From positions 62,001 to 126,000 of the IMG/VR virus record IMGVR_UViG_3300010885_076238: a DNA stretch of 64,000 nucleotides, one strand, 5' to 3'. The notes below the pieces were generated by a model. It saw only the letters and a list, made by a program, of their open reading frames with translations, had not been told where the DNA came from and ran no database searches. The position numbers and the translations under genes are program-made. Position 1 is the stretch's first letter; each line of letters opens with the position of its first letter. Of this stretch, positions 3,317-56,521 are shown piece by piece.

Positions 3317-4591
3317 ATGTTTGAAAAGTTATCTGATCTTGTTCAAGACTTGAAGGCCACTTCATCTTCAAATTCTAAAGTTTCAATTATTAGAGATTAT
3401 TTAAAAGAAGACAAAGACCTTCAAAATATTTTTTATTATGTCTATCATCCCTTTTATCAATTTTATGTTTCAAGTGATAACTGTAAGAAAAATAAAGAAT
3501 TAAAAAATAAGCAGCATGACTGTATTTTTAAATTGTTAGATGATCTTAGAAATAGAAAAATCACTGGTCACGATGCTGTTAGTGCCATTAATGGGTATTT
3601 AGAAAATCATGATCACGTTTCGCTTGTTCATGATATCTTGGACAAAGATTTAAAAATTAGAGCTGCCGATAAATTAATTAATAAAGCAATCCCCGGATTG
3701 ATCCCGGAATTTGAGGTTGCTTTAGCTGAGAAATACACACCGGAAATTATGAATCTCAATGAAGATTGGTATGCGAGTCATAAGCTCGACGGTTGCCGCT
3801 GTGTTTGTGTAGTCGATGATTCTGGTGTGGTGAGCATCTCAAGGCAGGGGAAAATTTTTACAACCTTGGGCTTGGTTGAAGATGCCATTAAAAACTTAAA
3901 CATTAAAAATGTTGTTTTTGACGGAGAGATTTGTCTACTTGATGAAAACGGAAAAGAAAGCTTTCAAGGAATAATGAAGCTTATTCGCAAGAAAGATCAT
4001 GTTATTCAAAACCCTGTTTATAAAATTTTTGATTTGCTAACTACAGGAGAATTTTATAATAAGAAAAGTGAAAGAAAACTATCTGATCGACTTGAATTTC
4101 TCAAGAGTGTTATCAAGGAAGATTCAAATCCTTGTTTGACTGTTTTAGAGCAAATTAAAATTAAAAATAACGAGCATTTTGAAGAGTTAACAAAGAAAGC
4201 AACAGATAGTGGGTGGGAAGGACTAATTCTCAGAAAAGACACAGGATACGCAGGAAAGAGGAGCAAGGATTTATTGAAGTATAAAAACTTCTTTGATGCT
4301 GAGTATGTTGTTGAAGACCTTGAATTCGGCCCGTTCAGATATGTTTTTGAAAACAAGGAAAAAGAAGAGATTATGCTTAGTTGTGCAACAATCAAGCATA
4401 AAGACAATGTCGTGAGAGTGGGCAGCGGCTTTACAATTGATCAAAGAAAGCATTATTACAAAAATCCTCAGGATCTTTTGGGAAAAACAATCAATGTTCA
4501 GTATTTTGAAGAAACCTTCAATCAAGAAGGAGGAATAAGTCTCAGGTTTCCTGTTGTTAAACACATTTATGAAAATGGTAGGGATACATAA
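3317..4591 (+). CDS. lig: ATP-dependent DNA ligase
   Basis: HKLDGCRC (I), FDGEI (III), KIFD (IIIa), WEGLILRK (IV), LLKYK (V), OB-fold VGSGFT and SLRFPV. Confidence 0.95.
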   Translation: MFEKLSDLVQDLKATSSSNSKVSIIRDYLKEDKDLQNIFYYVYHPFYQFYVSSDNCKKNKELKNKQHDCIFKLLDDLRNRKITGHDAVSAINGYLENHDHVSLVHDILDKDLKIRAADKLINKAIPGLIPEFEVALAEKYTPEIMNLNEDWYASHKLDGCRCVCVVDDSGVVSISRQGKIFTTLGLVEDAIKNLNIKNVVFDGEICLLDENGKESFQGIMKLIRKKDHVIQNPVYKIFDLLTTGEFYNKKSERKLSDRLEFLKSVIKEDSNPCLTVLEQIKIKNNEHFEELTKKATDSGWEGLILRKDTGYAGKRSKDLLKYKNFFDAEYVVEDLEFGPFRYVFENKEKEEIMLSCATIKHKDNVVRVGSGFTIDQRKHYYKNPQDLLGKTINVQYFEETFNQEGGISLRFPVVKHIYENGRDT

Positions 4592-30049: not shown

Positions 30050-32536
30050 TTATTTTTTACTAACTTGATAGCACCAAAATTTAATTGTTTTATCATTATT
30101 ATAGCCAACCTTCACACAACTCTTAATTTGTTTAATTTTTGATAAAATCTTTGCGAATTGTGGTTGGTATTTAAAAGAACCTTCTAAATTCATAACAAAT
30201 TCTAATATAACAAAAACTAAAGACTTAATTTCTGAAAATTCTTTTGTCTGTCTCCAGTGTGGGTTTAGATCAAATCTATTACTTAGCTTCACATCTACTG
30301 ATTCTAAATTAATCATAGTTTGAATAAAGCTATCAATTACATCATTTATTTCTCTAGATTTGTATGTAGCATCCATATTATTATCATAAGAAATAACTCT
30401 AAATTTTCTTTGCATTTCTCCAAGAATTCTTACAAATCTTTTGCCGATATTGGCAACACCTGTTTGGGACTTTGAAATTCCTTCTTTTGTAGAACCGATT
30501 TTGCTAAAATCTATTTTAGAATAATCGCCATCAAAAAGTCCAGAACTTATCAATTGATCACTTAATAAGATTGCTTTATTAATTTGAATCTTTAGTTCTT
30601 CTGTAATAATGCCTGGGCCGGTCATGCTTAGTATATAATTAAGATTGGTTCCGATGTAACGAACTTTATCTTTATTGAATATTCCCTTTGTAATAAGAGC
30701 TTGATATTCATCTTCGCTTATTTTTTTGGCTTCTCTCACAAGAGAAGAACATAAAACAAAAAAGTTATTGAGCACTCTTTCAATTTTACCCATTCCATAA
30801 TATTTCACATTGCCTAATTCAGTCTGAACTTTGCTAAGATTACGCTCCAATCCCATAAACCATTTTTCTTTAGGAGTGGCATCTAGTCCAAAACGGATTT
30901 CGTCTTTTTTTTGTTTATCATAATAGTCATTGTCACACTCGCCAATTTGATTAATAATAATTGTAGAAATTAATTCGATATTTTTTGTGCTAAAAAATAC
31001 TCCCTGAGTTGGCTCTGAGGGATATATTGATCCTGTATCGTGCGAGTCTAAAAGACCATCAATCCCTAGTTTTCTTAGTAGTCCCGTCCACATTGCCCAA
31101 GGGCGATATTTTTTTTGATTACGTTCGGGCTTTTCTTTTTCCCCTCTGTTTGAACCTATGTAGCCTTTTTTTGCTATTATCATATCTGATATTTTTTTTG
31201 TGATCACATAAAGAAATTTACCGGAAACGTCCTGCTTCCCAGATGATCTCAGACTGATTAGAGACTTCATTAAAGCTTGATTCCAATCTATATCATTTTT
31301 TTCACAAAAATCTTGTAGTTCTTTGCCAAATGGAACTTTTATGGATTCTGATATTTCTTTTTTTCTTTTTGCTATTTCAACTTCAAAATTACCAATTTTT
31401 TTTACCCAATAATCTAATAATTTTTTTACTTTTTTATTTGATAATAAGAAATAACTTTCAATGTAAGTATTGAAATTAGGGCTTGCATCAATATCTCTAA
31501 AATAAGATCCTAAATTAACATAAGATCTCAGACTTTTTGAAATTTTAGTTAATTCTTCTAAAGAAATTTTATCATTTCCAAGCATTTCGAGCATTTTGCG
31601 ATCATTTTCTCTTGAAATGCCCCCAGTACCGCTAGAAAAAGGCTCGGTTTTTATCATTTTATTTGCAAAATTTCTAACCTCGTCAGACAATGCAAAAGAA
31701 TTATTGTCTAAATTAGTGAATAAAGGTAGTTTTTGCGAAGAACCGGGCCATGGCGATAAACTAGAAATCAAATTATCAAGACCAAAATTAATCATCATTC
31801 TTGTTGCGTTGAAAGTCAATTCAGAAATTATTCTTTCAAAATTTTCTTTCGATGAAAGTTTTTCAATTCTATCAACAGAATATTTTTTAATTGATTTTTC
31901 TTCTTCTGAGTAGTCGTCCATCTCGCTCTTAGCAGTTGATACTGTGTTATGATAGAAATTATAAACAATATCATCGCTATACAATTCTGCTCCGCTTTTT
32001 AATAATTCCTCTTTTATTGTTTTTTTTAATAATTTAATTTTTAAATTTTCATGCTTGTAAATATAGTTGCTTATTTGTTGTTTTATGGTTTTGTTTATTT
32101 CATCAACATCGGAAATTTCTTTTATTTCTCCTTCTCCTGGCTTCATAGAAATATAACTTTCTTTATTTTTAATTTTAAAAATGTGAAGATACTTTCTGCT
32201 TCCGGCCATAGGAACGCCTGAGACATTCTTTTTAATAATATACTCAAGAGGAAAAGCATATAATCCTAAAGGAGTTCCACCATCGTCAGCAGAATATTTT
32301 GGCCCAAGTCTTTGAACACAAGAAAAATTACCCCATATGTCTTCGGGCTTAGTGTTATTGTTCACAGCTTTTTCAAAGACAGTCTTTATTTGTTTGATTT
32401 TTTCAAACTTTCTGTAAGGTTTTCCTGTTTGAGGATCGGCTATAGATGGATCAACTCTGCCCACGGCTCTTGAAAGGAGTTGTGGTTCTTCTATCAAATA
32501 TGTGTCTATTGGTTGAAAATATTCTTTAAAATTCAT
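30050..32536 (-). CDS. large putative internal head protein with split ART-like domain (paralogue of 34149-36446)
   Basis: MNFKEY...LIEE N-peptide; TPLGLYAFP and LGIDG..D...IYPSEPTQGVFF blocks shared with the paralogue. Confidence 0.6.
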   Translation of the reverse strand: MNFKEYFQPIDTYLIEEPQLLSRAVGRVDPSIADPQTGKPYRKFEKIKQIKTVFEKAVNNNTKPEDIWGNFSCVQRLGPKYSADDGGTPLGLYAFPLEYIIKKNVSGVPMAGSRKYLHIFKIKNKESYISMKPGEGEIKEISDVDEINKTIKQQISNYIYKHENLKIKLLKKTIKEELLKSGAELYSDDIVYNFYHNTVSTAKSEMDDYSEEEKSIKKYSVDRIEKLSSKENFERIISELTFNATRMMINFGLDNLISSLSPWPGSSQKLPLFTNLDNNSFALSDEVRNFANKMIKTEPFSSGTGGISRENDRKMLEMLGNDKISLEELTKISKSLRSYVNLGSYFRDIDASPNFNTYIESYFLLSNKKVKKLLDYWVKKIGNFEVEIAKRKKEISESIKVPFGKELQDFCEKNDIDWNQALMKSLISLRSSGKQDVSGKFLYVITKKISDMIIAKKGYIGSNRGEKEKPERNQKKYRPWAMWTGLLRKLGIDGLLDSHDTGSIYPSEPTQGVFFSTKNIELISTIIINQIGECDNDYYDKQKKDEIRFGLDATPKEKWFMGLERNLSKVQTELGNVKYYGMGKIERVLNNFFVLCSSLVREAKKISEDEYQALITKGIFNKDKVRYIGTNLNYILSMTGPGIITEELKIQINKAILLSDQLISSGLFDGDYSKIDFSKIGSTKEGISKSQTGVANIGKRFVRILGEMQRKFRVISYDNNMDATYKSREINDVIDSFIQTMINLESVDVKLSNRFDLNPHWRQTKEFSEIKSLVFVILEFVMNLEGSFKYQPQFAKILSKIKQIKSCVKVGYNNDKTIKFWCYQVSKK

Positions 32537-33003: not shown

Positions 33004-33273
33004 ATGAAAACTTTCAATGAATGGCTAAAAAACAGAGTATTGAGCGAAGGCAATCAAAAAAACGCAAGAGAACTCAGAGCGTTATTAGAAAAAGAGGGCT
33101 TTATTTTTGTGCGAGACGGTGACGAGCTTATAATGAAAAAAGACGACATTCCAATCACAGTAAGCAAACAATCGGATCGCGTTTTGCCAAGAAAACTTGT
33201 AAAAACCGTCCTGCGAGATTGGCAAAGAAACAAGGATAAAATAGACGCACTAAGAGCCAGACGAGCCGTATAA
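33004..33273 (+). CDS. putative internal head protein with HicA-like fold
   Basis: MKTFNEWL...LSE then ARELRALLEKEGF..R......ITV.....LPRKLVKTVLRD; TAAATA at 32988-32993. Confidence 0.55.
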   Translation: MKTFNEWLKNRVLSEGNQKNARELRALLEKEGFIFVRDGDELIMKKDDIPITVSKQSDRVLPRKLVKTVLRDWQRNKDKIDALRARRAV

Positions 33274-33338: not shown

Positions 33339-33701
33339 ATGTGGCTTTTTACTAAATATGGGTTTTTCAGTGTTGTTTGTGCAAGAAAGAACAATGGTTT
33401 GAGTTCTGACGTAGATACAGAAACTCTTATGATCAGAGCTAGATCAAAAAATCATCTTGAAAATTTGATCAATAGTTTTCAAGATTTGAATGATTGTCAA
33501 ATAGCAACAACACACGACACAGATTACCGATACAGAATCTTTGTTCCAAAGAAGATATGGAGCAATGTGATGCTAGAATTATCAAGTGAAATTGATTATG
33601 GAAACTTCAAGAGCAAAGTTCACAAATCTTTGCAAGACCAAGAATTTTCTCATTGCTTGGGTGATATTTGGAGTGTAATGTATAGGTATCAAGATGAGTA
33701 A
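33339..33701 (+). CDS. hypothetical phage protein
   Basis: MWLFTKYGFFSVV...IRAR...DYRYR...IDYGNFK. Confidence 0.75.
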   Translation: MWLFTKYGFFSVVCARKNNGLSSDVDTETLMIRARSKNHLENLINSFQDLNDCQIATTHDTDYRYRIFVPKKIWSNVMLELSSEIDYGNFKSKVHKSLQDQEFSHCLGDIWSVMYRYQDE

Positions 33702-34152
33702 GGTTCTATTTTTGCACGGGATGTTTGGTCAAAATAGTTCCAAGCCTTATTTTATAAGATCTTTAGGATTAGAGGTTTTTCATCCATTTTTGAATGATTG
33801 GAGCTTTGAAGATTCTATCAAAGAAGCCCAAAAACATCTAAATGAAACAGAGCCAGACCTAATCGTAGGTTCTTCAAGAGGCGGTGCGGTTGCGATGAAC
33901 ATTGATTCAAAAAATATACCAATTATTTTATTGGCTCCTGCTTGGAGGTTTTTTGGCAAGAAAGATCGAACCAAAGATAATGCAACTATAATTCATAGCG
34001 AAAATGACAACTTGATTCCGATTAGTGATAGCATAAAATTATCAGCAAATTCAAATTGCAAATTGGTAATTGCAGGAAAAGACCATAGACTAAATTGCGA
34101 AGATGGCAAAAATGCAATCAAAAAAATAATTAATACATATTTGAACTGCTAA
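33694..34152 (+). CDS. small alpha/beta hydrolase
   Basis: FLHG, GSSRGG nucleophile elbow, IHSEND, DHRL. Confidence 0.85.
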   Translation: MSKVLFLHGMFGQNSSKPYFIRSLGLEVFHPFLNDWSFEDSIKEAQKHLNETEPDLIVGSSRGGAVAMNIDSKNIPIILLAPAWRFFGKKDRTKDNATIIHSENDNLIPISDSIKLSANSNCKLVIAGKDHRLNCEDGKNAIKKIINTYLNC

Positions 34153-36446
34153 AGTATATCGGGGTCAAACATTTTAGAGCCATCTGGGTTAAGCGGCTCA
34201 GAGTCCTCGCTTGGCTTTCTAGGTGGTTTTGGCTTCTTATGCTGCGGATGCGTAGTCATTCTAAGTTGAGATGGCTTCAAAAACTCTGCGTTTTGGGGAA
34301 TATCGGGAGTGTATGGAAACATTCCAATCTTTATCAAATATCCAATAACATAAGAATGGTGTTCTATAATCTTTCTTAATTGCTCAAGACTCAACCCAGA
34401 AGAATTGGTTTGCAATTCATCAGCTTGAACGGTTCCAGATATTGGCTCGACTAGGTTCCCTTTATTATCATAAGAATAGCCATCCCCATAACGATCACAA
34501 AACATTATCAAATATCTATCAGAATCGACTTTTTCTAAAACTTTCCCGTAGTCATAATTTTGAAATGGCTTTATGAGCCTTACGACCGCTCCAATTTTTG
34601 GAATTAATAATTTTTCTATATTTGTCTTATTGGCAAGTAAAGTTGAAGACACTCTCTTAATTTCTTGTTCTATTGCATTTTTTAAATCTTGATCACTATC
34701 GGGATTATCTCTTTGTTTCATGAATGAATCAAATAAAATTTGAAATTTTGTTAAAAGTTTCATTGAGCTTAATGGCGATTCTCCTTCATATCTAATACTA
34801 TCTCGATAATTTCCAACAAGCTCTGAAAATCCTTTTTTGATTCCTTTAAGAAATCTATTTGCAGGCGTATCTTCAATATCCCAATCTAAAGGTTCTCCTG
34901 ATTTTCTTTTTTGATTTCTTGTTTGTTTTGGATGCTGCCAACTTTGTGAAAGATCTCTTGGGTTAAATTTATTATTTTGTAAGACTTTCAAAAGTTTAAA
35001 TTGCCTTGGATTAAAAAATGCTCCCTGAGTCGGCTCTCCACTGTGAATAGTGGATGTTCCTTCTGTATCTATTACTCCATCGATTCCCAATTCCCTTAAT
35101 ATTTTTGTCCACAATGCCCATTGTCTAATTGAACTATCGTCTTTATCAGTAACTTCTTGAGACATTATTTTTGTTATTTGATAAACGAAAGCCCCAGAAA
35201 TTGTGCTTAGTCCCCGTCGAGACATTTCTTCAACAGTTGTTGCTAAAACTTCCAGCCAATCAATTTTGTACTTATCACAGAGTTGTTTGATCTTATGATC
35301 AAGGGGGAAGTGAATATCTTTTAAATATTTGCCTTTTTGTGAATTAAATTCATCAAGACTTTTTTCTAGTGACTTTTTGATTTTTTTAGAAATCATTAAA
35401 GCCTTATCAAAAATTTCTGGATTTTTGAGAAATTCTGTTTGGGTTGCCATTTTACTGCGATCTTCGATGTAAGGCGTTCCTATTCTAATATTACCATCCG
35501 CCCCAGAAAAATTCGCTAGACTCATTATTTTATCGATATTAAAATTAAAAAATGATTCTTCTTCGTTTTCTTCATTCCAATTCAAACCATATAATTTTAT
35601 TAAGCTTTGCTTGTCTTCATCACCTGCACTTTTTATTATTTGTATTGCTCCACTAGACAAATAAATTCTAAGCTTTTCTTCATCTAACTTGCCAATGTTC
35701 ACAAATTGAGTTGGGCCATTGCTGGATCCATATCTTTTAATTATCATGTTATCCACAAATTTTTTAATTTCTTTTAATATTTCTGATTTTTCTGGAATGT
35801 CTAAAAGTTTTAATTTTTCTTTTATGCCAAAATAGCCACCTTGCAAACTATCATAATAAACATTTGAATGTAAATCGCCCAATGAATCTTCTATTAGCTC
35901 AAGAATTACTGGGGCATTTCTAAGATTAGATCGCACGAACTTTTTAAGAAAATCAATTTTTTTTGAAAAAACTTTTTTGAAATTTTTGCTAAGAAAATCT
36001 TTCTCTTCTCTTATATTTTTACGAATAGACTCTAAATTAGAAACTTCCATTTGCCCTCTTTTCATAGAAACTACATTATCACTAACCATCTCAAATATAA
36101 GAATGTATTTTCTACTGTATCCATAAGGGACTCTTAATCCGTTTTCTAAAACGTAATTTATAGGATAAGCATAAAGGCCCAAAGGGGTTTGTCCGTTTTT
36201 TGCGTTATAATAAATACCCAATCTTTGATAATCACTAAAACTAGCCCAAATTTTATCTTTAGGAACCTTTAGTTTGCTTACTATATTTTCTAGTTCTTTC
36301 TTTTTATTATTAGCTCTCCAAGGCTTGCCGGTTTCTGGCTCTACGAGCGAACTGTCTACGTCACCAATTCTTTTTTTAACTATGGCTTCAACGATTGTTT
36401 CAAAATAACTTGCGTCATATGTTGTGTAATATTCTTTGAAATTCAT
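34149..36446 (-). CDS. large putative internal head protein with split ART-like domain (paralogue of 30050-32536)
   Basis: MNFKEY...IVEA; TPLGLYAYP; LGIDGVIDT...IHSGEPTQGAFF. Confidence 0.6.
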   Translation of the reverse strand: MNFKEYYTTYDASYFETIVEAIVKKRIGDVDSSLVEPETGKPWRANNKKKELENIVSKLKVPKDKIWASFSDYQRLGIYYNAKNGQTPLGLYAYPINYVLENGLRVPYGYSRKYILIFEMVSDNVVSMKRGQMEVSNLESIRKNIREEKDFLSKNFKKVFSKKIDFLKKFVRSNLRNAPVILELIEDSLGDLHSNVYYDSLQGGYFGIKEKLKLLDIPEKSEILKEIKKFVDNMIIKRYGSSNGPTQFVNIGKLDEEKLRIYLSSGAIQIIKSAGDEDKQSLIKLYGLNWNEENEEESFFNFNIDKIMSLANFSGADGNIRIGTPYIEDRSKMATQTEFLKNPEIFDKALMISKKIKKSLEKSLDEFNSQKGKYLKDIHFPLDHKIKQLCDKYKIDWLEVLATTVEEMSRRGLSTISGAFVYQITKIMSQEVTDKDDSSIRQWALWTKILRELGIDGVIDTEGTSTIHSGEPTQGAFFNPRQFKLLKVLQNNKFNPRDLSQSWQHPKQTRNQKRKSGEPLDWDIEDTPANRFLKGIKKGFSELVGNYRDSIRYEGESPLSSMKLLTKFQILFDSFMKQRDNPDSDQDLKNAIEQEIKRVSSTLLANKTNIEKLLIPKIGAVVRLIKPFQNYDYGKVLEKVDSDRYLIMFCDRYGDGYSYDNKGNLVEPISGTVQADELQTNSSGLSLEQLRKIIEHHSYVIGYLIKIGMFPYTPDIPQNAEFLKPSQLRMTTHPQHKKPKPPRKPSEDSEPLNPDGSKMFDPDIL

Positions 36447-36452
36447 AAATTT

Positions 36453-37067
36453 TTAGGAGGTAGTAGGAATATTTTTTGGAATGGTTATGCCCAAACTAAT
36501 CAGGTGTTTATCTATTGCTAATTTAACAATTGGCAAAGGAATTCCGTGGCCGATATTACTATAGGTTGTTAGTCTAAATCCATAATTATATGCCAACTCA
36601 ATACTATCTTCTACTGGAACCGTAATGTCTTTTTTTCCATGAATAACTATGGTATCACTTGGTAATTTGTCTGGTTTTGAATTGAATATTTTCCAAGCAG
36701 GGCATCCTAAAACAAATTTAGCGTTTGGGTATCTGTAGCCTAATTTCATTGCAACAGCCCCGCCTTGACTTGTTCCAACAACCACATCTGGCACAAAATT
36801 TTTAATTTCTTCATCATGCTTTTTAACATTATCCTGCATATGCTGACTTCCCCAAGTATCTACCTTTTTTCTAATCATAAAAAATGGCTGATACCTCTTA
36901 ATTCTACCCAAATAAGCAGCAAAATAGTGATTTGTAGTGCCTATGGATTTAACATCATAGCCCAGAGTAGCTAGTTTTTTGGGTTTAGAGCCGCTACTAT
37001 TCATTCCGGTAAACCATAAGACCCTTGGTGGTCTTTCTTTTTCTTGAAGCCAGGTTTTAAATTCCAT
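36453..37067 (-). CDS. alpha/beta hydrolase with capsid-targeting-like N-terminus
   Basis: Preferred start MEFKTWLQE at 37067; GTSQGG, IHGKKD, GHG triad. Confidence 0.8.
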   Translation of the reverse strand: MEFKTWLQEKERPPRVLWFTGMNSSGSKPKKLATLGYDVKSIGTTNHYFAAYLGRIKRYQPFFMIRKKVDTWGSQHMQDNVKKHDEEIKNFVPDVVVGTSQGGAVAMKLGYRYPNAKFVLGCPAWKIFNSKPDKLPSDTIVIHGKKDITVPVEDSIELAYNYGFRLTTYSNIGHGIPLPIVKLAIDKHLISLGITIPKNIPTTS

Positions 37068-37138
37068 ATTTAATATATATATTGTAGTAGATAAAAAGTG
37101 CAAAAAACAATGATTTAATAAATAACTAGGCACTCATA

Positions 37139-37146
37139 TATAAATA
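37139..37146 (+). promoter_or_regulatory. T4-type late promoter TATAAATA
   Basis: Exact T4 gp55 consensus, 16 nt upstream of ATG 37163, with GAGG RBS between. Confidence 0.65.
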
Positions 37147-37162: not shown

Positions 37163-38764
37163 ATGATTAATTTTTATGAATTCTTAAATATTATAAACGT
37201 CAAAAACGAAGCTTTTGAAAAAGATTTATTCGACCCTCATCCAGATAACTCCGATCCAGAAGGCGGCTCATCTCACGATGTTTACAGACTAAAAAATAAA
37301 AAGGGAGAAGACTTTTGGAGCAAATCTGCTGCGTCTAACCTACAGACGGTTAATGAGTATTTGGCTTGGAAAATTTATAAATTATTTGACATTAGCGTTG
37401 CCTCAAACGCTCATTTAGTTGTTAATAATAATAAAATGAGATTGGTTTCTAGCCAAGTTTCTGGAAAGCAAATTCCTTTGGACTATAGTTCAAGTTTCTC
37501 AAGTGCTTTATCTGGTTCTGATATTCATAAAGGATTTTTTGTTGATGCCTTTTTAGGACATTGGGATGTTGTTGGAAACGCTCCTAGATCGAATTTATTT
37601 ATAGATGATCAAAAACGGGTTGTAAGAATTGATTTGGGCGGTTTAGATTTTAGAGCTACTGGCCCAAGAAAAAGCAAAACAATTCCTGGCTCTTGGGGTG
37701 GAGAAGTTGGAGAATTAAAAACAATGGGCGGATTAGGTGGCCCAATAATGAAAAGTAATGCTTCTGCCGTGTTGGGAAATCTACAAAAAGATCAACTTTT
37801 AGAATCTGCTAAGATTTTTTCAAGAGTAGGTTGGTCACAAATAGAAAACGTACTGAAGCAAGTAGAAGCAGAGGTAGTAGATATTTCCAAAGAACATAAC
37901 TTGCCTGAAGTCGCAGAAGAAACTTCTAAATACATAAAAGAAATAGAAGAAGTTCTATACAGTCGTTTTCAAGACATGCACAAAAAAATAAAAGAACTAG
38001 GATTGGATCAATTTTCAGAATGGCAAAAACTAGCAGGAGTGCAAATCTTTTCAGAAGAAATAGCGACTTACAATCAAATCGAAGATAAGGAGATGCTCTA
38101 CAAGACATATTACGACACATATGCAGATGCAAATGCAAAAGATGGCAAAGGTCTAAAGCCTTGGAGCAAAAGCGATTTTGAATGGCGAGCAGAAAAATGG
38201 ACATATGCAGGAATACTTCCAAAAGAAGGAGTTCCTTTTGAGCAATTAGGATTCATTACAGCAAGAGAAAAAGGCGGGGTCTTTAAATTAACTGGTATGC
38301 AAGGCCCAAACACAAAAGCAAAAATAAAAGGATTGATGGAGCTTGCTGCTTTAGCAAGACCAATTTGGGGAGCGATGGATAAAGACTTTACAGAAAGACT
38401 TAAGAAATTAGGATTTTTAACTCCTCCGAAAAAAATCATGACTTTCCTTCTTCCTGTTATACAAAGTGATCCTCAATTTTCTTCAGGTGGCGAATGGGGA
38501 AATCTGAACGATGATGGTGGAATAAATTTTGAATTAAGCGGCATAGGAAGCACTATCAAATATTTTACAGCTAACAAACAATTTTATAAATTGATCATAG
38601 ACAAAATGGTTTCTAAAGGTAAGATTGATGCAAAAATGATTAAATTATTAGAAAAATGGCCGACCATGCCAGAAGCAATGAAGCAAATGTCTTTATCGTT
38701 TTTGCCAAAAAACTTAGACTTGGACGTTGAATCTTTAGATTGGCTATCGTTTGTTTTAGCTTAA
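37163..38764 (+). CDS. putative internal head protein: HipA/PI3-4K-like kinase domain + possible GNAT-like domain
   Basis: MINFYEFL N-peptide; WSKS, NEYLAWKIY, GHWDVVGN...N, RIDLG; C-domain GFITARE...LKKLGF. Confidence 0.6.
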   Translation: MINFYEFLNIINVKNEAFEKDLFDPHPDNSDPEGGSSHDVYRLKNKKGEDFWSKSAASNLQTVNEYLAWKIYKLFDISVASNAHLVVNNNKMRLVSSQVSGKQIPLDYSSSFSSALSGSDIHKGFFVDAFLGHWDVVGNAPRSNLFIDDQKRVVRIDLGGLDFRATGPRKSKTIPGSWGGEVGELKTMGGLGGPIMKSNASAVLGNLQKDQLLESAKIFSRVGWSQIENVLKQVEAEVVDISKEHNLPEVAEETSKYIKEIEEVLYSRFQDMHKKIKELGLDQFSEWQKLAGVQIFSEEIATYNQIEDKEMLYKTYYDTYADANAKDGKGLKPWSKSDFEWRAEKWTYAGILPKEGVPFEQLGFITAREKGGVFKLTGMQGPNTKAKIKGLMELAALARPIWGAMDKDFTERLKKLGFLTPPKKIMTFLLPVIQSDPQFSSGGEWGNLNDDGGINFELSGIGSTIKYFTANKQFYKLIIDKMVSKGKIDAKMIKLLEKWPTMPEAMKQMSLSFLPKNLDLDVESLDWLSFVLA

Positions 38765-45432: not shown

Positions 45433-46521
45433 ATGCCTAATACAATTACGCCAATCGAAGCAGCAAGCCTTTACTTCAAAGAAGGCTCAAGTGATAAAGT
45501 TTACAATGCTACCTTGGAAAAAGAGGATGACAACAAATATGTTGTTAATTTCTCTTACGGCAGACGAGGAAGTGCATTGAAGTCTGGATCCAAAACCTCA
45601 AGCCCCGTTTCTCTTAAGGAAGCCAAGACCATCTTTGACAAAATTGTCAGAGAGAAAACTTCTAAGGGCTATAAATACGTCACCGACGCTGTTGCTAAAG
45701 AAATTCATGTTGCCGACAACCCACCGGACACGCCTACTGAGTCCAAGTGCGTTTTGCTCAATCCAATCAGCGAAGAAGAACTTGAAAAGTATTTGAACGA
45801 TCCAGATTGGATTGCCCAACAGAAAATTGATGGAGTTAGATTTATGCTCCATAAGGTAAAAGATAAAATTACTGCGTATAACCGTCGCGGACTTTACGCA
45901 AACATTCCAACCGATCTTTATAATTTCGCAAAAAACACTCAAGAAGATTTTCTAGTTGATGGAGAATTGATTGGAGATGTTTTTCACACCTTCGATATTC
46001 TTGAATATAACGGCAAAGACCTTACTCAAAACTCAGTTGTCGAAAGGCTTGAGGTTTTGTTGAATTGGGTTAATAATAATCCGTGCGAACTTGTAAAGTA
46101 TACAGAAACTCAAAGTTCAAGCAAAATTGAATTTTATGATCGTCTTGTTCGTGAAAACCAAGAAGGAATTGTTTTCAAACATAAAGACGCAAAGTATTAT
46201 GCTGGTAGGCCCGCCAGCGGTGGAAAGTATGTAAAATATAAGTTTTACAGCACTTGTAGTTGTGTCGTGACTGATGTGAATAATAAAAGAAGCGTAAGTA
46301 TAGGCTTGCTCAATGGCAAAAAATTAGTTGATGCTGGGAATGTTACTATTCCTATCAATTTTGAAATTCCTAATAAGGATGACATTGTGGAAGTCAGATA
46401 CCTTTATGCAAGAAAGCAGTCTGGCTCTCTTTATCAGCCTGTGTATCTTGGCAAAAGAACCGATATTGTTAGAGAAGATTGCAAGCAAAGTCAACTGAAG
46501 TATAAATTTGATGATGAATAA
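45433..46521 (+). CDS. WGR-domain + ATP-dependent DNA ligase
   Basis: WGR: SSDKVY...YGRRG...EKTSKGY; ligase: QKIDG, DGEL, FDIL, EGIVFK, KYKF; OB fold VEVRY, LYQPVY. Confidence 0.85.
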   Translation: MPNTITPIEAASLYFKEGSSDKVYNATLEKEDDNKYVVNFSYGRRGSALKSGSKTSSPVSLKEAKTIFDKIVREKTSKGYKYVTDAVAKEIHVADNPPDTPTESKCVLLNPISEEELEKYLNDPDWIAQQKIDGVRFMLHKVKDKITAYNRRGLYANIPTDLYNFAKNTQEDFLVDGELIGDVFHTFDILEYNGKDLTQNSVVERLEVLLNWVNNNPCELVKYTETQSSSKIEFYDRLVRENQEGIVFKHKDAKYYAGRPASGGKYVKYKFYSTCSCVVTDVNNKRSVSIGLLNGKKLVDAGNVTIPINFEIPNKDDIVEVRYLYARKQSGSLYQPVYLGKRTDIVREDCKQSQLKYKFDDE

Positions 46522-55182: not shown

Positions 55183-55761
55183 ATGACAACATTCAAAGAA
55201 TGGCTATGGAATAAAACCAAAGAACCCGAATACAAAGACTATAGTGCCTATGCCGCTGCTGTTGCTGCCAAAGAGAAAGAGCAGAAGGATAAGGATTCTA
55301 AGTACAATACAGTAAAAATAGACGATATTGAGATTCAAGGCGATGAAGACTTTATAAATAAAACAAAAAGTGCCTTATCACTATTATCACGCTCAAAAAC
55401 CTTCCAAGAAATTAAAAAATATTTAGGAAAGATAAAACAACACCGAGCGTCAGGAATGGTTCCTTATGCAAAACCACCCACTTTTGAAGTCGCAAAACCA
55501 ACATACTCAAGCGGTTCAAAATGGTACGCATCTGGTATCGCACACGATACCTACCACTCTTATCTTTATCACAACAATCAAGAATGGCATGGCAAAAAAG
55601 CAGAACAAGAATGTATTGCAATACAAATAAAGGTACATGACGAAATAGTTGGGAAAAGAATAATTCCAAACCCAATAGATCACCTTAATAAAAGATATCT
55701 GCAATCAATAAAAGATAATCCTACCCATCAAGACATTCCTTACGAAAAACGAGATTGGTAA
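55183..55761 (+). CDS. putative internal head protein, zincin-like (HDxxH)
   Basis: MTTFKEWL; WYASGIAHDTYHS...AEQEC; ATAAATA at 55171-55177. Confidence 0.6.
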   Translation: MTTFKEWLWNKTKEPEYKDYSAYAAAVAAKEKEQKDKDSKYNTVKIDDIEIQGDEDFINKTKSALSLLSRSKTFQEIKKYLGKIKQHRASGMVPYAKPPTFEVAKPTYSSGSKWYASGIAHDTYHSYLYHNNQEWHGKKAEQECIAIQIKVHDEIVGKRIIPNPIDHLNKRYLQSIKDNPTHQDIPYEKRDW

Positions 55762-56329: not shown

Positions 56330-56521
56330 TCATTTCTTATCGCTGCTGATTAGATTTAAATAACCGCCGCAATTCCTACATTTGGCTTTACCAGCATTTA
56401 TATCATACATTTTGGCCTTTTCTTTGTTTCCGCATCTACTGCACTCAGCATTACGATGGCCTTGAGGAGCATTTTTAGTTTTCGCTTCTAATATTTGTTG
56501 AAACTCATAAAAATTAATCAT
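56330..56521 (-). CDS. small zinc-ribbon protein with capsid-targeting-like N-terminus
   Basis: MINFYEFQQILEA; CSRC...CRNC; TAAATA (minus, 56540-56545) and AAGGAG. Confidence 0.7.
   Translation of the reverse strand: MINFYEFQQILEAKTKNAPQGHRNAECSRCGNKEKAKMYDINAGKAKCRNCGGYLNLISSDKK

What the first reader, a model, noticed from the sequence alone, without database searches (positions are those of the whole stretch)
37163..38764. Virion-type HipA/PI-kinase-like protein with a second internal capsid-peptide-like segment
Seen: kinase-like motifs (beta3 Lys in WSKS, helix-C Glu in NEYLA, catalytic loop GHWDVVGN..SN, metal-binding RIDLG). These are followed by QFSEWQKLAGVQIFSEE, which resembles the F.EW...SE leader of the other cargo proteins, then a domain with a GNAT-like ending (LKKLGF). 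It has an exact TATAAATA promoter. Inference: a fusion of two cargo genes that the head protease may cut into a kinase and an acetyltransferase-like effector. Known: T7 gp0.7 is an early-expressed kinase; a packaged kinase would act even earlier.
Basis: partly seen in the sequence, partly recalled or inferred. Interest (0 to 1): 0.74.

Follow-up and report, generated by a model that had tools for sequence, protein, structure and literature searches.

The report
Phage kinase–acetyltransferase fusion keeping two leaders
An uncultured freshwater phage gene joins an atypical kinase to an acetyltransferase-like enzyme, and each half keeps a short leader like the tag phage T4 uses to load proteins into its head, so it may be a packaged two-part effector, though packaging and cutting are untested.

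Summary
The ORF 37163..38764 (+, 533 aa) is real and under purifying selection. Residues ~20-281 model as a protein-kinase-like fold. The closest solved structures are CtkA, CotH and HipA, then the PI3/PI4 kinases. Residues 300-480 model as a GNAT fold.

The two halves are independent modules. They occur alone (about 270 aa) or inside giant phage "polyvalent" proteins, and are fused only in this phage's close relatives. The junction is exact. Kinase-only homologues end ...LGL, and GNAT-only homologues start with an M-x-x-F-x-E-W...[LIF]-x-E-E leader. Here that leader survives as residues 282-299 without its Met.

The same leader opens 14 of 302 ORFs in the genome (0.9 expected). It resembles the T4 capsid-targeting sequence MKTYQEFIAE.

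Two points are not supported. TATAAATA is no more frequent than chance in this AT-rich genome. No T4-type or other head protease, capsid or portal gene was recognised in the 204-kb record. Packaging and internal cleavage therefore remain inference.

Verdict: a well-supported fusion of two effector cassettes. It is a new variant of known kinds (polyvalent-protein modules, T4-like cargo leaders).

The parts
37163..38764 (+). Whole gene, 533 aa plus stop: leader, kinase-like module, relic leader, GNAT-like module, helical tail
   Evidence: Five fused orthologues at 68-77% identity. Identical contig in a second study and a variant strain with 18 synonymous and 3 conservative changes.
37163..37219 (+). 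N-terminal leader, residues 1-19 (MINFYEF...NEAFE), T4-CTS-like
   Evidence: The pattern M-x(1,2)-F-x-[EDQT]-[FWY] opens 14 of 302 ORFs against 0.88 expected. T4 IPII and IPIII start MKTYQEFIAE. Low pLDDT in the model. Orthologues carry [LI]-N-E here.
37220..38005 (+). Protein-kinase-like module, residues 20-281; invariant K54 (37322-37324), E65 (37355-37357), D135 (37565-37567), N144 (37592-37594), D157 (37631-37633)
   Evidence: Alignment A2 invariants. AF2 model pLDDT 87.1, pTM 0.87. Foldseek PDB gives only kinases. VIA-align Z: CtkA 16.6, CotH 15.7, HipA 13.2, actin-fragmin kinase 12.1, LepB-N 11.2, VPS34 10.2. ESM Atlas features point to HipA_2, PI3_PI4, Act-Frag and LepB_N clusters.
38006..38059 (+). 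Fusion junction, a relic internal leader, residues 282-299 (DQFSEW...IFSEE)
   Evidence: Kinase-only homologues end ...LGL, and GNAT-only homologues begin M-x-x-F-x-E-W...[LIF]-x-E-E followed by IATW/Y. Disordered in both models. 71% conserved among the fused orthologues, the same as the kinase module. The three substitutions here in a variant strain are all synonymous.
38060..38602 (+). GNAT-fold module, residues 300-480; family-invariant G363, K375, G381, K466; K-L-T-G-x-x-G at the beta4-alpha3 position; LKKLGF at alpha4-beta6
   Evidence: Model pLDDT 90.6. All top-50 PDB matches are GNATs (Z 9-11 over 130-150 residues). Swiss-Prot models give RimI, RimJ, KAT2B and NAGS. ESM Atlas shape search gives Acetyltransf_1 clusters. 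Invariants.
38603..38761 (+). C-terminal helical extension, residues 481-533, shared with close GNAT-only homologues
37139..37146 (+). TATAAATA, a chance occurrence that is not part of the system
36453..37067 (-). Divergent neighbour: leader-bearing (MEFKTWLQEKE) alpha/beta-hydrolase-like protein, 204 aa from this ATG. In a relative it is fused upstream of a kinase-like module with the internal leader MKNFYEFL
   Evidence: weak Hydrolase_4 and UPF0227 hits; P0165
34149..36446 (-). Leader-bearing 765-aa protein of unknown function (MNFKEYY...IVE), same cassette locus
   Evidence: It is a paralogue of the 828-aa ORF. A homologue lies next to the kinase-like gene in relative L015.
33004..33273 (+). 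Leader-bearing HicA-like protein, 89 aa (MKTFNEWLKNRVLSE, then the HicA domain at residues 21-72)
   Evidence: PF07927, 29.1 bits, cut-off 27
30050..32536 (-). Leader-bearing 828-aa paralogue (MNFKEYF...LIEE)

Best explanation
The gene encodes a two-enzyme effector of an uncultured freshwater phage (>204 kb, not T4-like). The first module is an atypical protein-kinase-like phosphotransferase of the CtkA/CotH/HipA branch with a complete catalytic set. The second is a divergent GNAT-fold acyltransferase. The gene arose when two neighbouring cassette genes, each with its own short N-terminal leader, were joined head to tail. The stop of the kinase gene and the Met of the GNAT gene were lost, and the rest of the second leader stayed as an 18-residue disordered linker. 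These points are shown. The following are inferred. Both modules belong to families that other phages build into head-associated, injected polyvalent proteins. The leader also looks like the T4 capsid-targeting sequence and is usually followed by [LI]-x-E. So the protein is most likely loaded into the prohead and delivered with the DNA, to modify host or defence components at the very start of infection. The relic leader may then serve as a protease site that separates the two enzymes. My odds: kinase fold 0.9; active phosphotransferase 0.75; GNAT fold 0.85; fusion origin 0.9; virion cargo 0.4; internal cleavage 0.25.
For: The gene is real and selected. Kinase module: invariant K, E, D, N and D, a high-confidence model, only kinases among the structural matches with Z up to 16.6, ESM features, and weak HipA_C, HipA_2 and PI3_PI4 Pfam hints in homologues. 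GNAT module: four structure libraries agree. Modularity: 1543 library hits, each covering one half only, either stand-alone or inside proteins of up to 7004 aa. Fusion: the termini of single-module homologues meet at L281|D282. Relatives L014, L015 and L017 carry the two genes separately in the same locus. A second independent fusion (hydrolase plus kinase, P0165) also keeps its internal leader. Leader: 14 of 302 ORFs against 0.88 expected, five of them clustered at window 30-38.8 kb. [LI]-x-E follows in 10 of 14 against 57 of 288, p = 8e-5. It is conserved as peptide and not as DNA. T4 IPII and IPIII start MKTYQEFIAE, and the CTS concept is described in PMC3012670. Virion link in other phages: the fold is fused to an HK97-type portal protein and to ART-bearing giants in BFVD; it sits in Gordonia phage Phendrix gp66 right after the portal gene and in a DSL-LC01 3289-aa protein just before the maturation protease; Dolphis gp117 combines it with an ART. 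The GNAT-like module is fused to Acb1 and ART-PolyVal. [quoted passage not shown]
Against: No prohead protease (PF03420, PF04586, PF00574), T4 gp20-24, HK97 capsid, portal or MuF gene was recognised in the record. The gene lies among replication genes (helicase, ligase, clamp loader) and not in a head module. TATAAATA is chance and no shared promoter precedes the leader genes. P0001's own N-terminal leader lacks a strict [LIFM]-x-E. No Pfam, PHROG or PDB sequence match reaches significance for either module, so the enzyme assignments rest on predicted structures and conserved residues. The D135-to-N144 spacing (D-x8-N) is longer than in classical kinases. No transcript or proteome data exist.
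Confidence: 0.6

Rival explanations
1. The protein is the same two-enzyme fusion, but it is not virion cargo. It is made inside the infected cell and works there for host takeover or counter-defence. The shared M-x-x-F-x-E-W leader is something other than a capsid-targeting signal, for example a common N-terminal helix for folding or stability, a tag for another phage-specific localisation or turnover system, or a translation-friendly start. The internal copy would then be just a tolerated linker.
For: The gene sits among replication genes. No head protease or scaffold was recognised. The phage is not T4-like. Fourteen leader proteins, some only 63-89 aa, is a large and mixed set. More distant stand-alone homologues carry quite different N-termini.
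Against: The leader is conserved at the peptide level only and closely matches the proven T4 CTS. A [LI]-x-E follows it far more often than in other ORFs. Both modules recur in portal-linked or polyvalent proteins elsewhere. Leaders that differ by lineage on homologous catalytic domains are what a capsid-specific signal would show.
Confidence: 0.35
2. The kinase-like module does not phosphorylate proteins. It acts on a small molecule or a nucleic-acid end, for example an NAD/ADP-ribose-derived or cyclic-nucleotide immune signal, or an RNA or DNA terminus. This rival concerns the substrate only and is compatible with either delivery route.
For: Homologues are fused to NUDIX, to DSP-type 'Swiss-army-knife' phosphatases and to ADP-ribosyltransferases. 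The partner GNAT family is fused to the anti-CBASS phosphodiesterase Acb1. PI3/PI4 lipid kinases and LepB are among the structural matches. An extra invariant F-R-A-x-G-x-R-K block after the DxG motif has no counterpart I can assign.
Against: The three best structural neighbours (CtkA, CotH, HipA) are described as protein kinases (that description rests on my knowledge of those families). Bacteria lack phosphoinositides.
Confidence: 0.25
3. One or both modules are inactive, structural or binding-only remnants (a pseudokinase or pseudo-GNAT).
For: There is no significant Pfam match. The GNAT module lacks a textbook Q/R-x-x-G-x-G/A motif and has unusual invariant lysines.
Against: All five catalytic kinase positions are invariant across 28 diverse members. 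The gene is under strong purifying selection. G-x-x-G is conserved at the CoA pyrophosphate-loop position.
Confidence: 0.07
4. The long ORF is an assembly or gene-calling artefact that joins two genes.
For: Relatives carry the two genes separately.
Against: Five fused orthologues come from other samples. An identical contig exists in a second study, and a divergent strain spans the junction without indels and with only synonymous changes there.
Confidence: 0.02

Closest known systems
CtkA (Helicobacter pylori), CotH (Bacillus spore coat) and HipA atypical Ser/Thr kinases
   Same: They are the best structural matches to the N-module (Z 16.6, 15.7 and 13.2 over 208-238 residues). The order of elements is the same: beta3 Lys, helix-C Glu, catalytic Asp...Asn, then a metal-binding Asp-x-Gly.
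   Different: Sequence identity is only 11-14%. No Pfam HipA_C, HipA_2 or CotH match passes threshold. There is no HipA N-terminal domain and no HipB partner. The Asp-to-Asn spacer is longer. An invariant F-R-A-x-G-x-R-K block follows DxG.
Kinase and GNAT domains of phage 'polyvalent proteins' (Iyer et al. 2017, PMC5512222)
   Same: Both modules recur inside giant multidomain phage proteins next to ART, NUDIX, phosphatase and Acb1 domains. That paper reports a GNAT typically next to an ART, and solo versions of these domains.
   Different: This protein has only two modules and no MuF, portal or peptidase domain. The paper's kinase family is described with features I could not match here (loss of the C-terminal subdomain, an insert between His and Asp). 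The modules here carry their own short leaders.
Phage T4 internal proteins IPI-III and Alt, with the capsid-targeting sequence MKTYQEFIAE cut by gp21 after [LI]-x-E (PMC3012670; the site rule is from my own knowledge)
   Same: A short, shared N-terminal leader sits on otherwise unrelated proteins, with the same pattern (aromatic at position 4, Glu at 6, aromatic at 7, then [LI]-x-E). The leader genes are clustered in a locus whose gene content varies between relatives.
   Different: No gp21, gp22 or gp23 homologues were found and the tape measure is huge, so this is not a T4-like virion. There are fourteen leader genes instead of a handful. A leader is retained inside a fused protein, which is not known for T4.
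T7 gp0.7 and the HipA-family kinases of 'Gratiaviridae' encoded between portal and capsid genes (Benler et al. 2021, PMC8008677)
   Same: All are phage-encoded protein-kinase-fold enzymes thought to act on host proteins. The Gratiaviridae ones are HipA-like and lie in a head module.
   Different: gp0.7 is an early-expressed kinase that is not packaged. The Gratiaviridae kinase is interpreted as a late immunity function. Neither is fused to a GNAT or carries a CTS-like leader.

Membership tests
Protein-kinase-like (PKL) superfamily | Bilobal fold: N-lobe sheet with helix C, and a helical C-lobe carrying the catalytic loop | tested here: met
   AF2 model pLDDT 87.1. All top structural matches are kinases, Z up to 16.6.
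Protein-kinase-like (PKL) superfamily | Beta3 Lys paired with helix-C Glu; catalytic Asp with downstream Asn; metal-binding Asp of a DxG/DFG motif | tested here: met
   K54, E65, D135, N144 and D157 are invariant in 28 sequences. The D-to-N spacing is atypically long.
Protein-kinase-like (PKL) superfamily | ATP-dependent phosphotransfer | not testable with these tools
   Needs biochemistry.
HipA family (Pfam HipA_C / HipA_2) | Significant match to the family profile | tested here: not met
   No hit for P0001. Only 5 of 28 homologues give HipA_C, at E >= 0.032. HipA_2 gives E 0.005 in one giant homologue, below the cut-off.
HipA family (Pfam HipA_C / HipA_2) | HipA N-terminal coupling domain and an adjacent HipB antitoxin | tested here: not met
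   No such domain in Pfam. The neighbours are leader-bearing effector-like genes.
PI3K/PI4K lipid kinases | Match to PF00454 plus a helical accessory domain | tested here: not met
   No Pfam hit. Only fold-level similarity of the catalytic core, Z about 10.
GNAT acyltransferase superfamily | GNAT alpha/beta fold with the beta4-alpha3 and alpha4-beta6 core | tested here: met
   Model pLDDT 90.6. PDB, Swiss-Prot and ESM Atlas matches are all GNATs.
GNAT acyltransferase superfamily | Profile match to Acetyltransf families, and the Q/R-x-x-G-x-G/A CoA-binding motif | tested here: inconclusive
   No Pfam hit in any of 28 members. A conserved K-L-T-G-x-x-G sits at the expected position.
T4-type capsid-targeted internal proteins | A shared N-terminal leader resembling MKTYQEFIAE on unrelated proteins | tested here: met
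   14 of 302 ORFs against 0.88 expected. T4 IPII and IPIII were read directly.
T4-type capsid-targeted internal proteins | Leader ends in a [LI]-x-E protease site | tested here: inconclusive
   Enriched in the set (10 of 14 against 57 of 288) and present before the GNAT module as F-S-E-E. P0001's own N-terminus has only K-N-E and A-F-E, although orthologues have [LI]-N-E.
T4-type capsid-targeted internal proteins | gp21-type prohead protease and scaffolding core in the same phage | tested here: not met
   PF03420 and tblastn with T4 gp20-24 find nothing. The record is only 88% complete and its head genes are unrecognised, so absence is not proven.
T4-type capsid-targeted internal proteins | Protein present, processed, in virions | not testable with these tools
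   The phage is uncultured, and no proteome or RNA run was listed.
Phage polyvalent proteins | Several conflict-type effector domains in one polypeptide, drawn from families reused in other such proteins | tested here: met
   Two modules, both found in giants with ART, NUDIX, phosphatase or Acb1 domains.
Phage polyvalent proteins | Head-module context, or fusion to MuF, portal or a releasing peptidase | tested here: not met
   None in this gene or its neighbourhood. This context is met only by homologues in other phages.

The most novel reading that the evidence does not exclude
A T4-style capsid-targeting and propeptide system (an M-x-x-F-x-E-W leader followed by [LI]-x-E) operates in a phage lineage unrelated to T4. 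It tags a large, shuffling set of effector cassettes: kinase, GNAT, HicA-like RNase, hydrolase and large unknown proteins. When cassettes fuse, the internal leader is kept as a built-in protease site. These fusions would then be caught-in-the-act precursors of polyvalent proteins, delivered as one polypeptide and released as separate enzymes in the capsid or the host.
Probability: 0.22. Interest if true: 0.78.

Novelty: new variant of a known kind. Interest (0 to 1): 0.56.

Why it matters
Packaged or injected phage effectors act before any phage gene is expressed, and few are characterised beyond T4 Alt and the IPs and a few others. This locus offers three things. First, an uncharacterised and very widespread kinase-like family (hundreds of homologues, absent from Pfam and PHROG annotation) and a divergent GNAT family, both tied to phage-host conflict domains. 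Second, a residue-exact natural example of how multi-effector proteins can arise from leader-tagged cassettes. Third, a candidate portable capsid-targeting tag outside the T4 group, which would be useful for loading proteins into capsids if confirmed. If the leader is not a capsid signal, a 16-fold enriched N-terminal peptide on 14 unrelated proteins still needs an explanation.

Tried and rejected
- **Late promoter.** I counted TATAAATA genome-wide. It sits at chance level and is rarely upstream of ORFs. A sigma-70 and terminator scan around the gene showed nothing above shuffles. No shared upstream DNA precedes the leader genes. The promoter claim is rejected.
- **Sequence-level family assignment.** Pfam, PHROGs, and PDB by phmmer or profile gave no significant hit for either module. 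The ESM Atlas gave nothing for the C-module by features.
- **Head protease and head genes.** Searches with PF03420, PF04586, PF00574, PF07068, PF04233, PF05065, PF04860 and PF03237, and tblastn with T4 gp20-24, found nothing. PHROG scans of 30 large ORFs found only tail, tape-measure, replication and sugar-modification genes.
- **Relatives in IMG/VR.** Searches by protein or alignment returned nothing.
- **Expression data.** No RNA run was listed.
- **Short internal motif.** F-x-E-W alone was rejected as evidence because it is expected by chance.
- **Not run.** Complex prediction was not used, because ligand jobs give no verdict.
Full report
**What is there.** The window is part of a 204,311-bp IMG/VR virus record. 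The record is 34.7% G+C, scored 88% complete, and linear. The same sequence occurs in freshwater metagenomes from at least three studies. It is a real, selected gene. Five full-length orthologues (68-77% identity) come from other assemblies. A second study holds an identical contig. A third holds a variant strain whose 21 substitutions are 18 synonymous and 3 conservative, with no indels.

**The N-terminal module is a kinase-fold enzyme.** Direct profile searches were silent (Pfam, PHROGs, PDB sequences). A search of 1.84 billion representatives with the family profile gave 1543 hits. Y72, G159, E184 and an F-R-A-x-G-x-R-K block (R164, A165, G167, K170) are also invariant. AlphaFold2 on that alignment gave a confident model, with pLDDT 87.1 and pTM 0.87. 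Foldseek against the PDB returned only kinases: VPS34, PI4KIII-beta, mTOR and CtkA. Re-alignment with VIA-align gave the following ranking:

| Structure | Z |
|---|---|
| H. pylori CtkA | 16.6 |
| B. cereus CotH | 15.7 |
| HipA | 13.2 |
| actin-fragmin kinase | 12.1 |
| LepB N-terminal PI4-kinase | 11.2 |
| VPS34 | about 10 |

Language-model features point the same way (HipA_2, PI3_PI4_kinase, Act-Frag_cataly, LepB_N). "HipA/PI-kinase-like" is therefore a fair description at fold level. Membership of the HipA or PI3K/PI4K families proper is not met: there is no profile match and no accessory domains.

**The C-terminal module is a GNAT fold.** The model built on 28 homologues has pLDDT 90.6. 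Its top 50 PDB matches are all GNAT acetyltransferases, with Z of 9-11 that covers nearly the whole target. Swiss-Prot models give RimI, RimJ, KAT2B and N-acetylglutamate synthase. The ESM Atlas shape search gives Acetyltransf_1 clusters. No sequence profile detects it. Its conserved K-L-T-G-x-x-G and two invariant lysines are unusual, so acyl-CoA use is likely but not shown.

**The fusion.** Every library hit covers one half only, and both halves occur together only in P0001's own cluster. Close kinase-only homologues end "...KK[IL]xxLGL" and then a stop. Close GNAT-only homologues begin M-x-x-F-x-E-W..., run for 14-20 residues, end in [LIF]-x-E-E, and continue IATW/Y. In P0001 the text reads ...KELGL | DQFSEW...IFSEE | IATY. 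So the join is at L281|D282, and residues 282-299 are the second gene's leader minus its Met. Both models leave this stretch disordered. It is as conserved among the fused orthologues as the kinase module, 71% against 72%. The three substitutions it carries in the variant strain are all synonymous.

Relatives' contigs show the unfused state. The kinase-like and GNAT-like genes are separate and lie in varying orientation within a syntenic locus that also holds a homologue of the 765-aa neighbour. One relative has an independent fusion: the alpha/beta-hydrolase cassette (a homologue of window 36453-37067) is joined to a kinase-like module, again with the internal leader MKNFYEFL retained (P0165).

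**The leader.** The pattern M-x(1,2)-F-x-[EDQT]-[FWY] opens 14 of 302 crude ORFs, against 0.88 expected from its internal frequency. Five of the 14 are clustered at window 30-38.8 kb. It is conserved as peptide and not as DNA, and no common upstream element precedes it. An [LI]-x-E follows within residues 7-24 in 10 of 14 leader ORFs, against 57 of 288 others (Fisher p = 8e-5). The strict bipartite form F-x-E-[FWY]-x(2-14)-[LIFM]-x-E-E occurs only twice in the proteome, against 0.47 expected: once at the start of the 828-aa neighbour and once at residue 284 of P0001.

I read T4 IPII and IPIII from the T4 record, and both begin MKTYQEFIAE. That is the capsid-targeting sequence that loads internal proteins into the scaffolding core (PMC3012670). 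It has the same pattern. T4-family and giant-phage prohead proteases cut after Glu. The A-x-E rule for SPN3US is in PMC10052503, and the [LI]-x-E rule for T4 is from my own knowledge. The tagged set here looks like effectors: the kinase, the GNAT, a HicA-like protein (PF07927 above cut-off), an alpha/beta hydrolase and two large paralogues of unknown function.

**Virion association elsewhere.** The kinase-like module sits in several head-linked proteins:
- Gordonia phage Phendrix gp66 (1479 aa), encoded immediately after the portal gene.
- A 3289-aa protein of Actinomycetia phage DSL-LC01, just upstream of the maturation protease.
- Pseudomonas phage Dolphis gp117, together with an ADP-ribosyltransferase.
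- In BFVD, a 1201-aa protein annotated as an HK97-type portal, and several ART-bearing giants.

Homologues are also fused to NUDIX, DSP-type phosphatases and pentapeptide repeats. The GNAT-like module is fused to ART-PolyVal and to the anti-CBASS enzyme Acb1. This is the repertoire of the polyvalent proteins that Iyer et al. predicted to be packaged and injected (PMC5512222). HipA-family kinases encoded between the portal and capsid genes were also noted in gut phages (PMC8008677).

**What does not hold.** TATAAATA at 37139-37146 is a chance match: there are 28 and 23 copies against 28.6 and 24.1 expected, and almost none lie before an ORF. The phage is not T4-like. No gp20-24 homologues were found. 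No HK97 capsid, portal, MuF, S78 or ClpP protease was found either. A tape-measure protein of more than 2353 aa lies at the contig end. The gene's wider neighbourhood is replication genes. No RNA run was listed. Packaging of this protein and cutting at the relic leader are therefore inferences from analogy. I put them at about 0.4 and 0.25.

**Mechanism proposed.** Shown: a two-module protein with an intact kinase catalytic set and a GNAT fold, made by fusion of two leader-tagged cassettes. Inferred: the N-terminal leader directs the protein into the prohead. A Glu-specific maturation protease removes it and may also cut after E298/E299 in the disordered linker, releasing a kinase of about 30 kDa and an acyltransferase of about 27 kDa. 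These would enter the host with the DNA and modify host or defence components. The main rival keeps the enzymology but places the protein in the cytoplasm, with the leader serving another purpose. A second rival, which concerns the substrate only, has the kinase act on nucleotides or nucleic-acid ends, as its NUDIX, phosphatase and ART partners hint.

**Novelty.** Kinase and GNAT modules in phage polyvalent proteins, and CTS-tagged internal proteins, are known kinds. The new elements are this particular unannotated kinase-like family, the T4-like leader on a large cassette set in a phage that is not T4-like, and the residue-exact fusion that keeps an internal leader. I rate it a new variant of a known kind, of moderate interest.

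Noticed in passing
window 33004-33273 (+): An 89-aa ORF with a near-perfect T4-CTS-like start (MKTFNEWLKNRVLSE), followed by a HicA toxin domain (PF07927, 29.1 bits against a cut-off of 27). No obvious HicB partner was checked. If the leader is a capsid tag, this would be a leader-tagged mRNA interferase candidate.
   Followed up: partly
window 30050-32536 (-) and 34149-36446 (-); relative L015:2472-4511 and L015:5330-6004: Two large paralogous leader-bearing proteins (828 and 765 aa) have no family match. They share a conserved block (G-I-D-G...T-S-T-I-H...E-P-T-Q-G-x-F-F) that also appears in a 224-aa leader protein of a relative. The enzyme type is unknown.
   Followed up: partly
window 36453-37133 (-) and 33694-34152 (+): Two small alpha/beta-hydrolase-like ORFs flank the locus (weak UPF0227, Hydrolase_4 and Abhydrolase_1 hits). 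The first carries the leader if started at the ATG at 37067, so the GTG start at 37133 listed by the ORF finder is probably wrong. The second has no leader.
   Followed up: partly
window 56330-56521 (-): A 63-aa zinc-ribbon-like ORF starts MINFYEF. Its first 17 nucleotides are identical to the start of the kinase-GNAT gene. It is the only leader pair that is similar at the DNA level.
   Followed up: no
genome 13992-14591, 169775-170698, 178059-178873, 179987-180253, 193319-194071 (outside the window; loci L005, L010, L011); window 55183-55761: Further leader-bearing ORFs of 71-250 aa have no family assignment. Two pairs lie adjacent to each other, which suggests additional small cassette loci.
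   Followed up: partly
genome 197253-204311 (L011:11253-18311): A tape-measure-like ORF of more than 2353 aa runs off the contig end. Tail-fibre and baseplate-like genes sit at the other end, so the record is probably cut within the tail module. No capsid, portal, terminase or protease gene could be recognised anywhere in it.
   Followed up: partly
window 3317-4591 (+) and 45433-46521 (+): Two ORFs match the ATP-dependent DNA ligase PHROG (E 8e-83 and 3e-22). The second matches only the C-terminal part of the profile.
   Followed up: no
genome 8933-10387, 22298-23764, 187086-189419; relative L017: The phage and its relatives carry many sugar-modifying genes (glycosyltransferase-like, Nol-like carbamoyltransferase, methyltransferase/glycosyltransferase, DegT aminotransferase, hexapeptide transferase), as well as a tRNA nucleotidyltransferase.
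   Followed up: no
homologues P0163-P0185: A large clade of stand-alone kinase-like proteins, from contigs of up to 260-587 kb, carries a different conserved N-terminus (M-R-I-T-E-x-Q-L-R-x-x-I-R-E-T-L-L-N-E, then I-D-I-E-D-V). It also ends in L-x-E before the catalytic domain. It may be another lineage's version of a leader.
   Followed up: no
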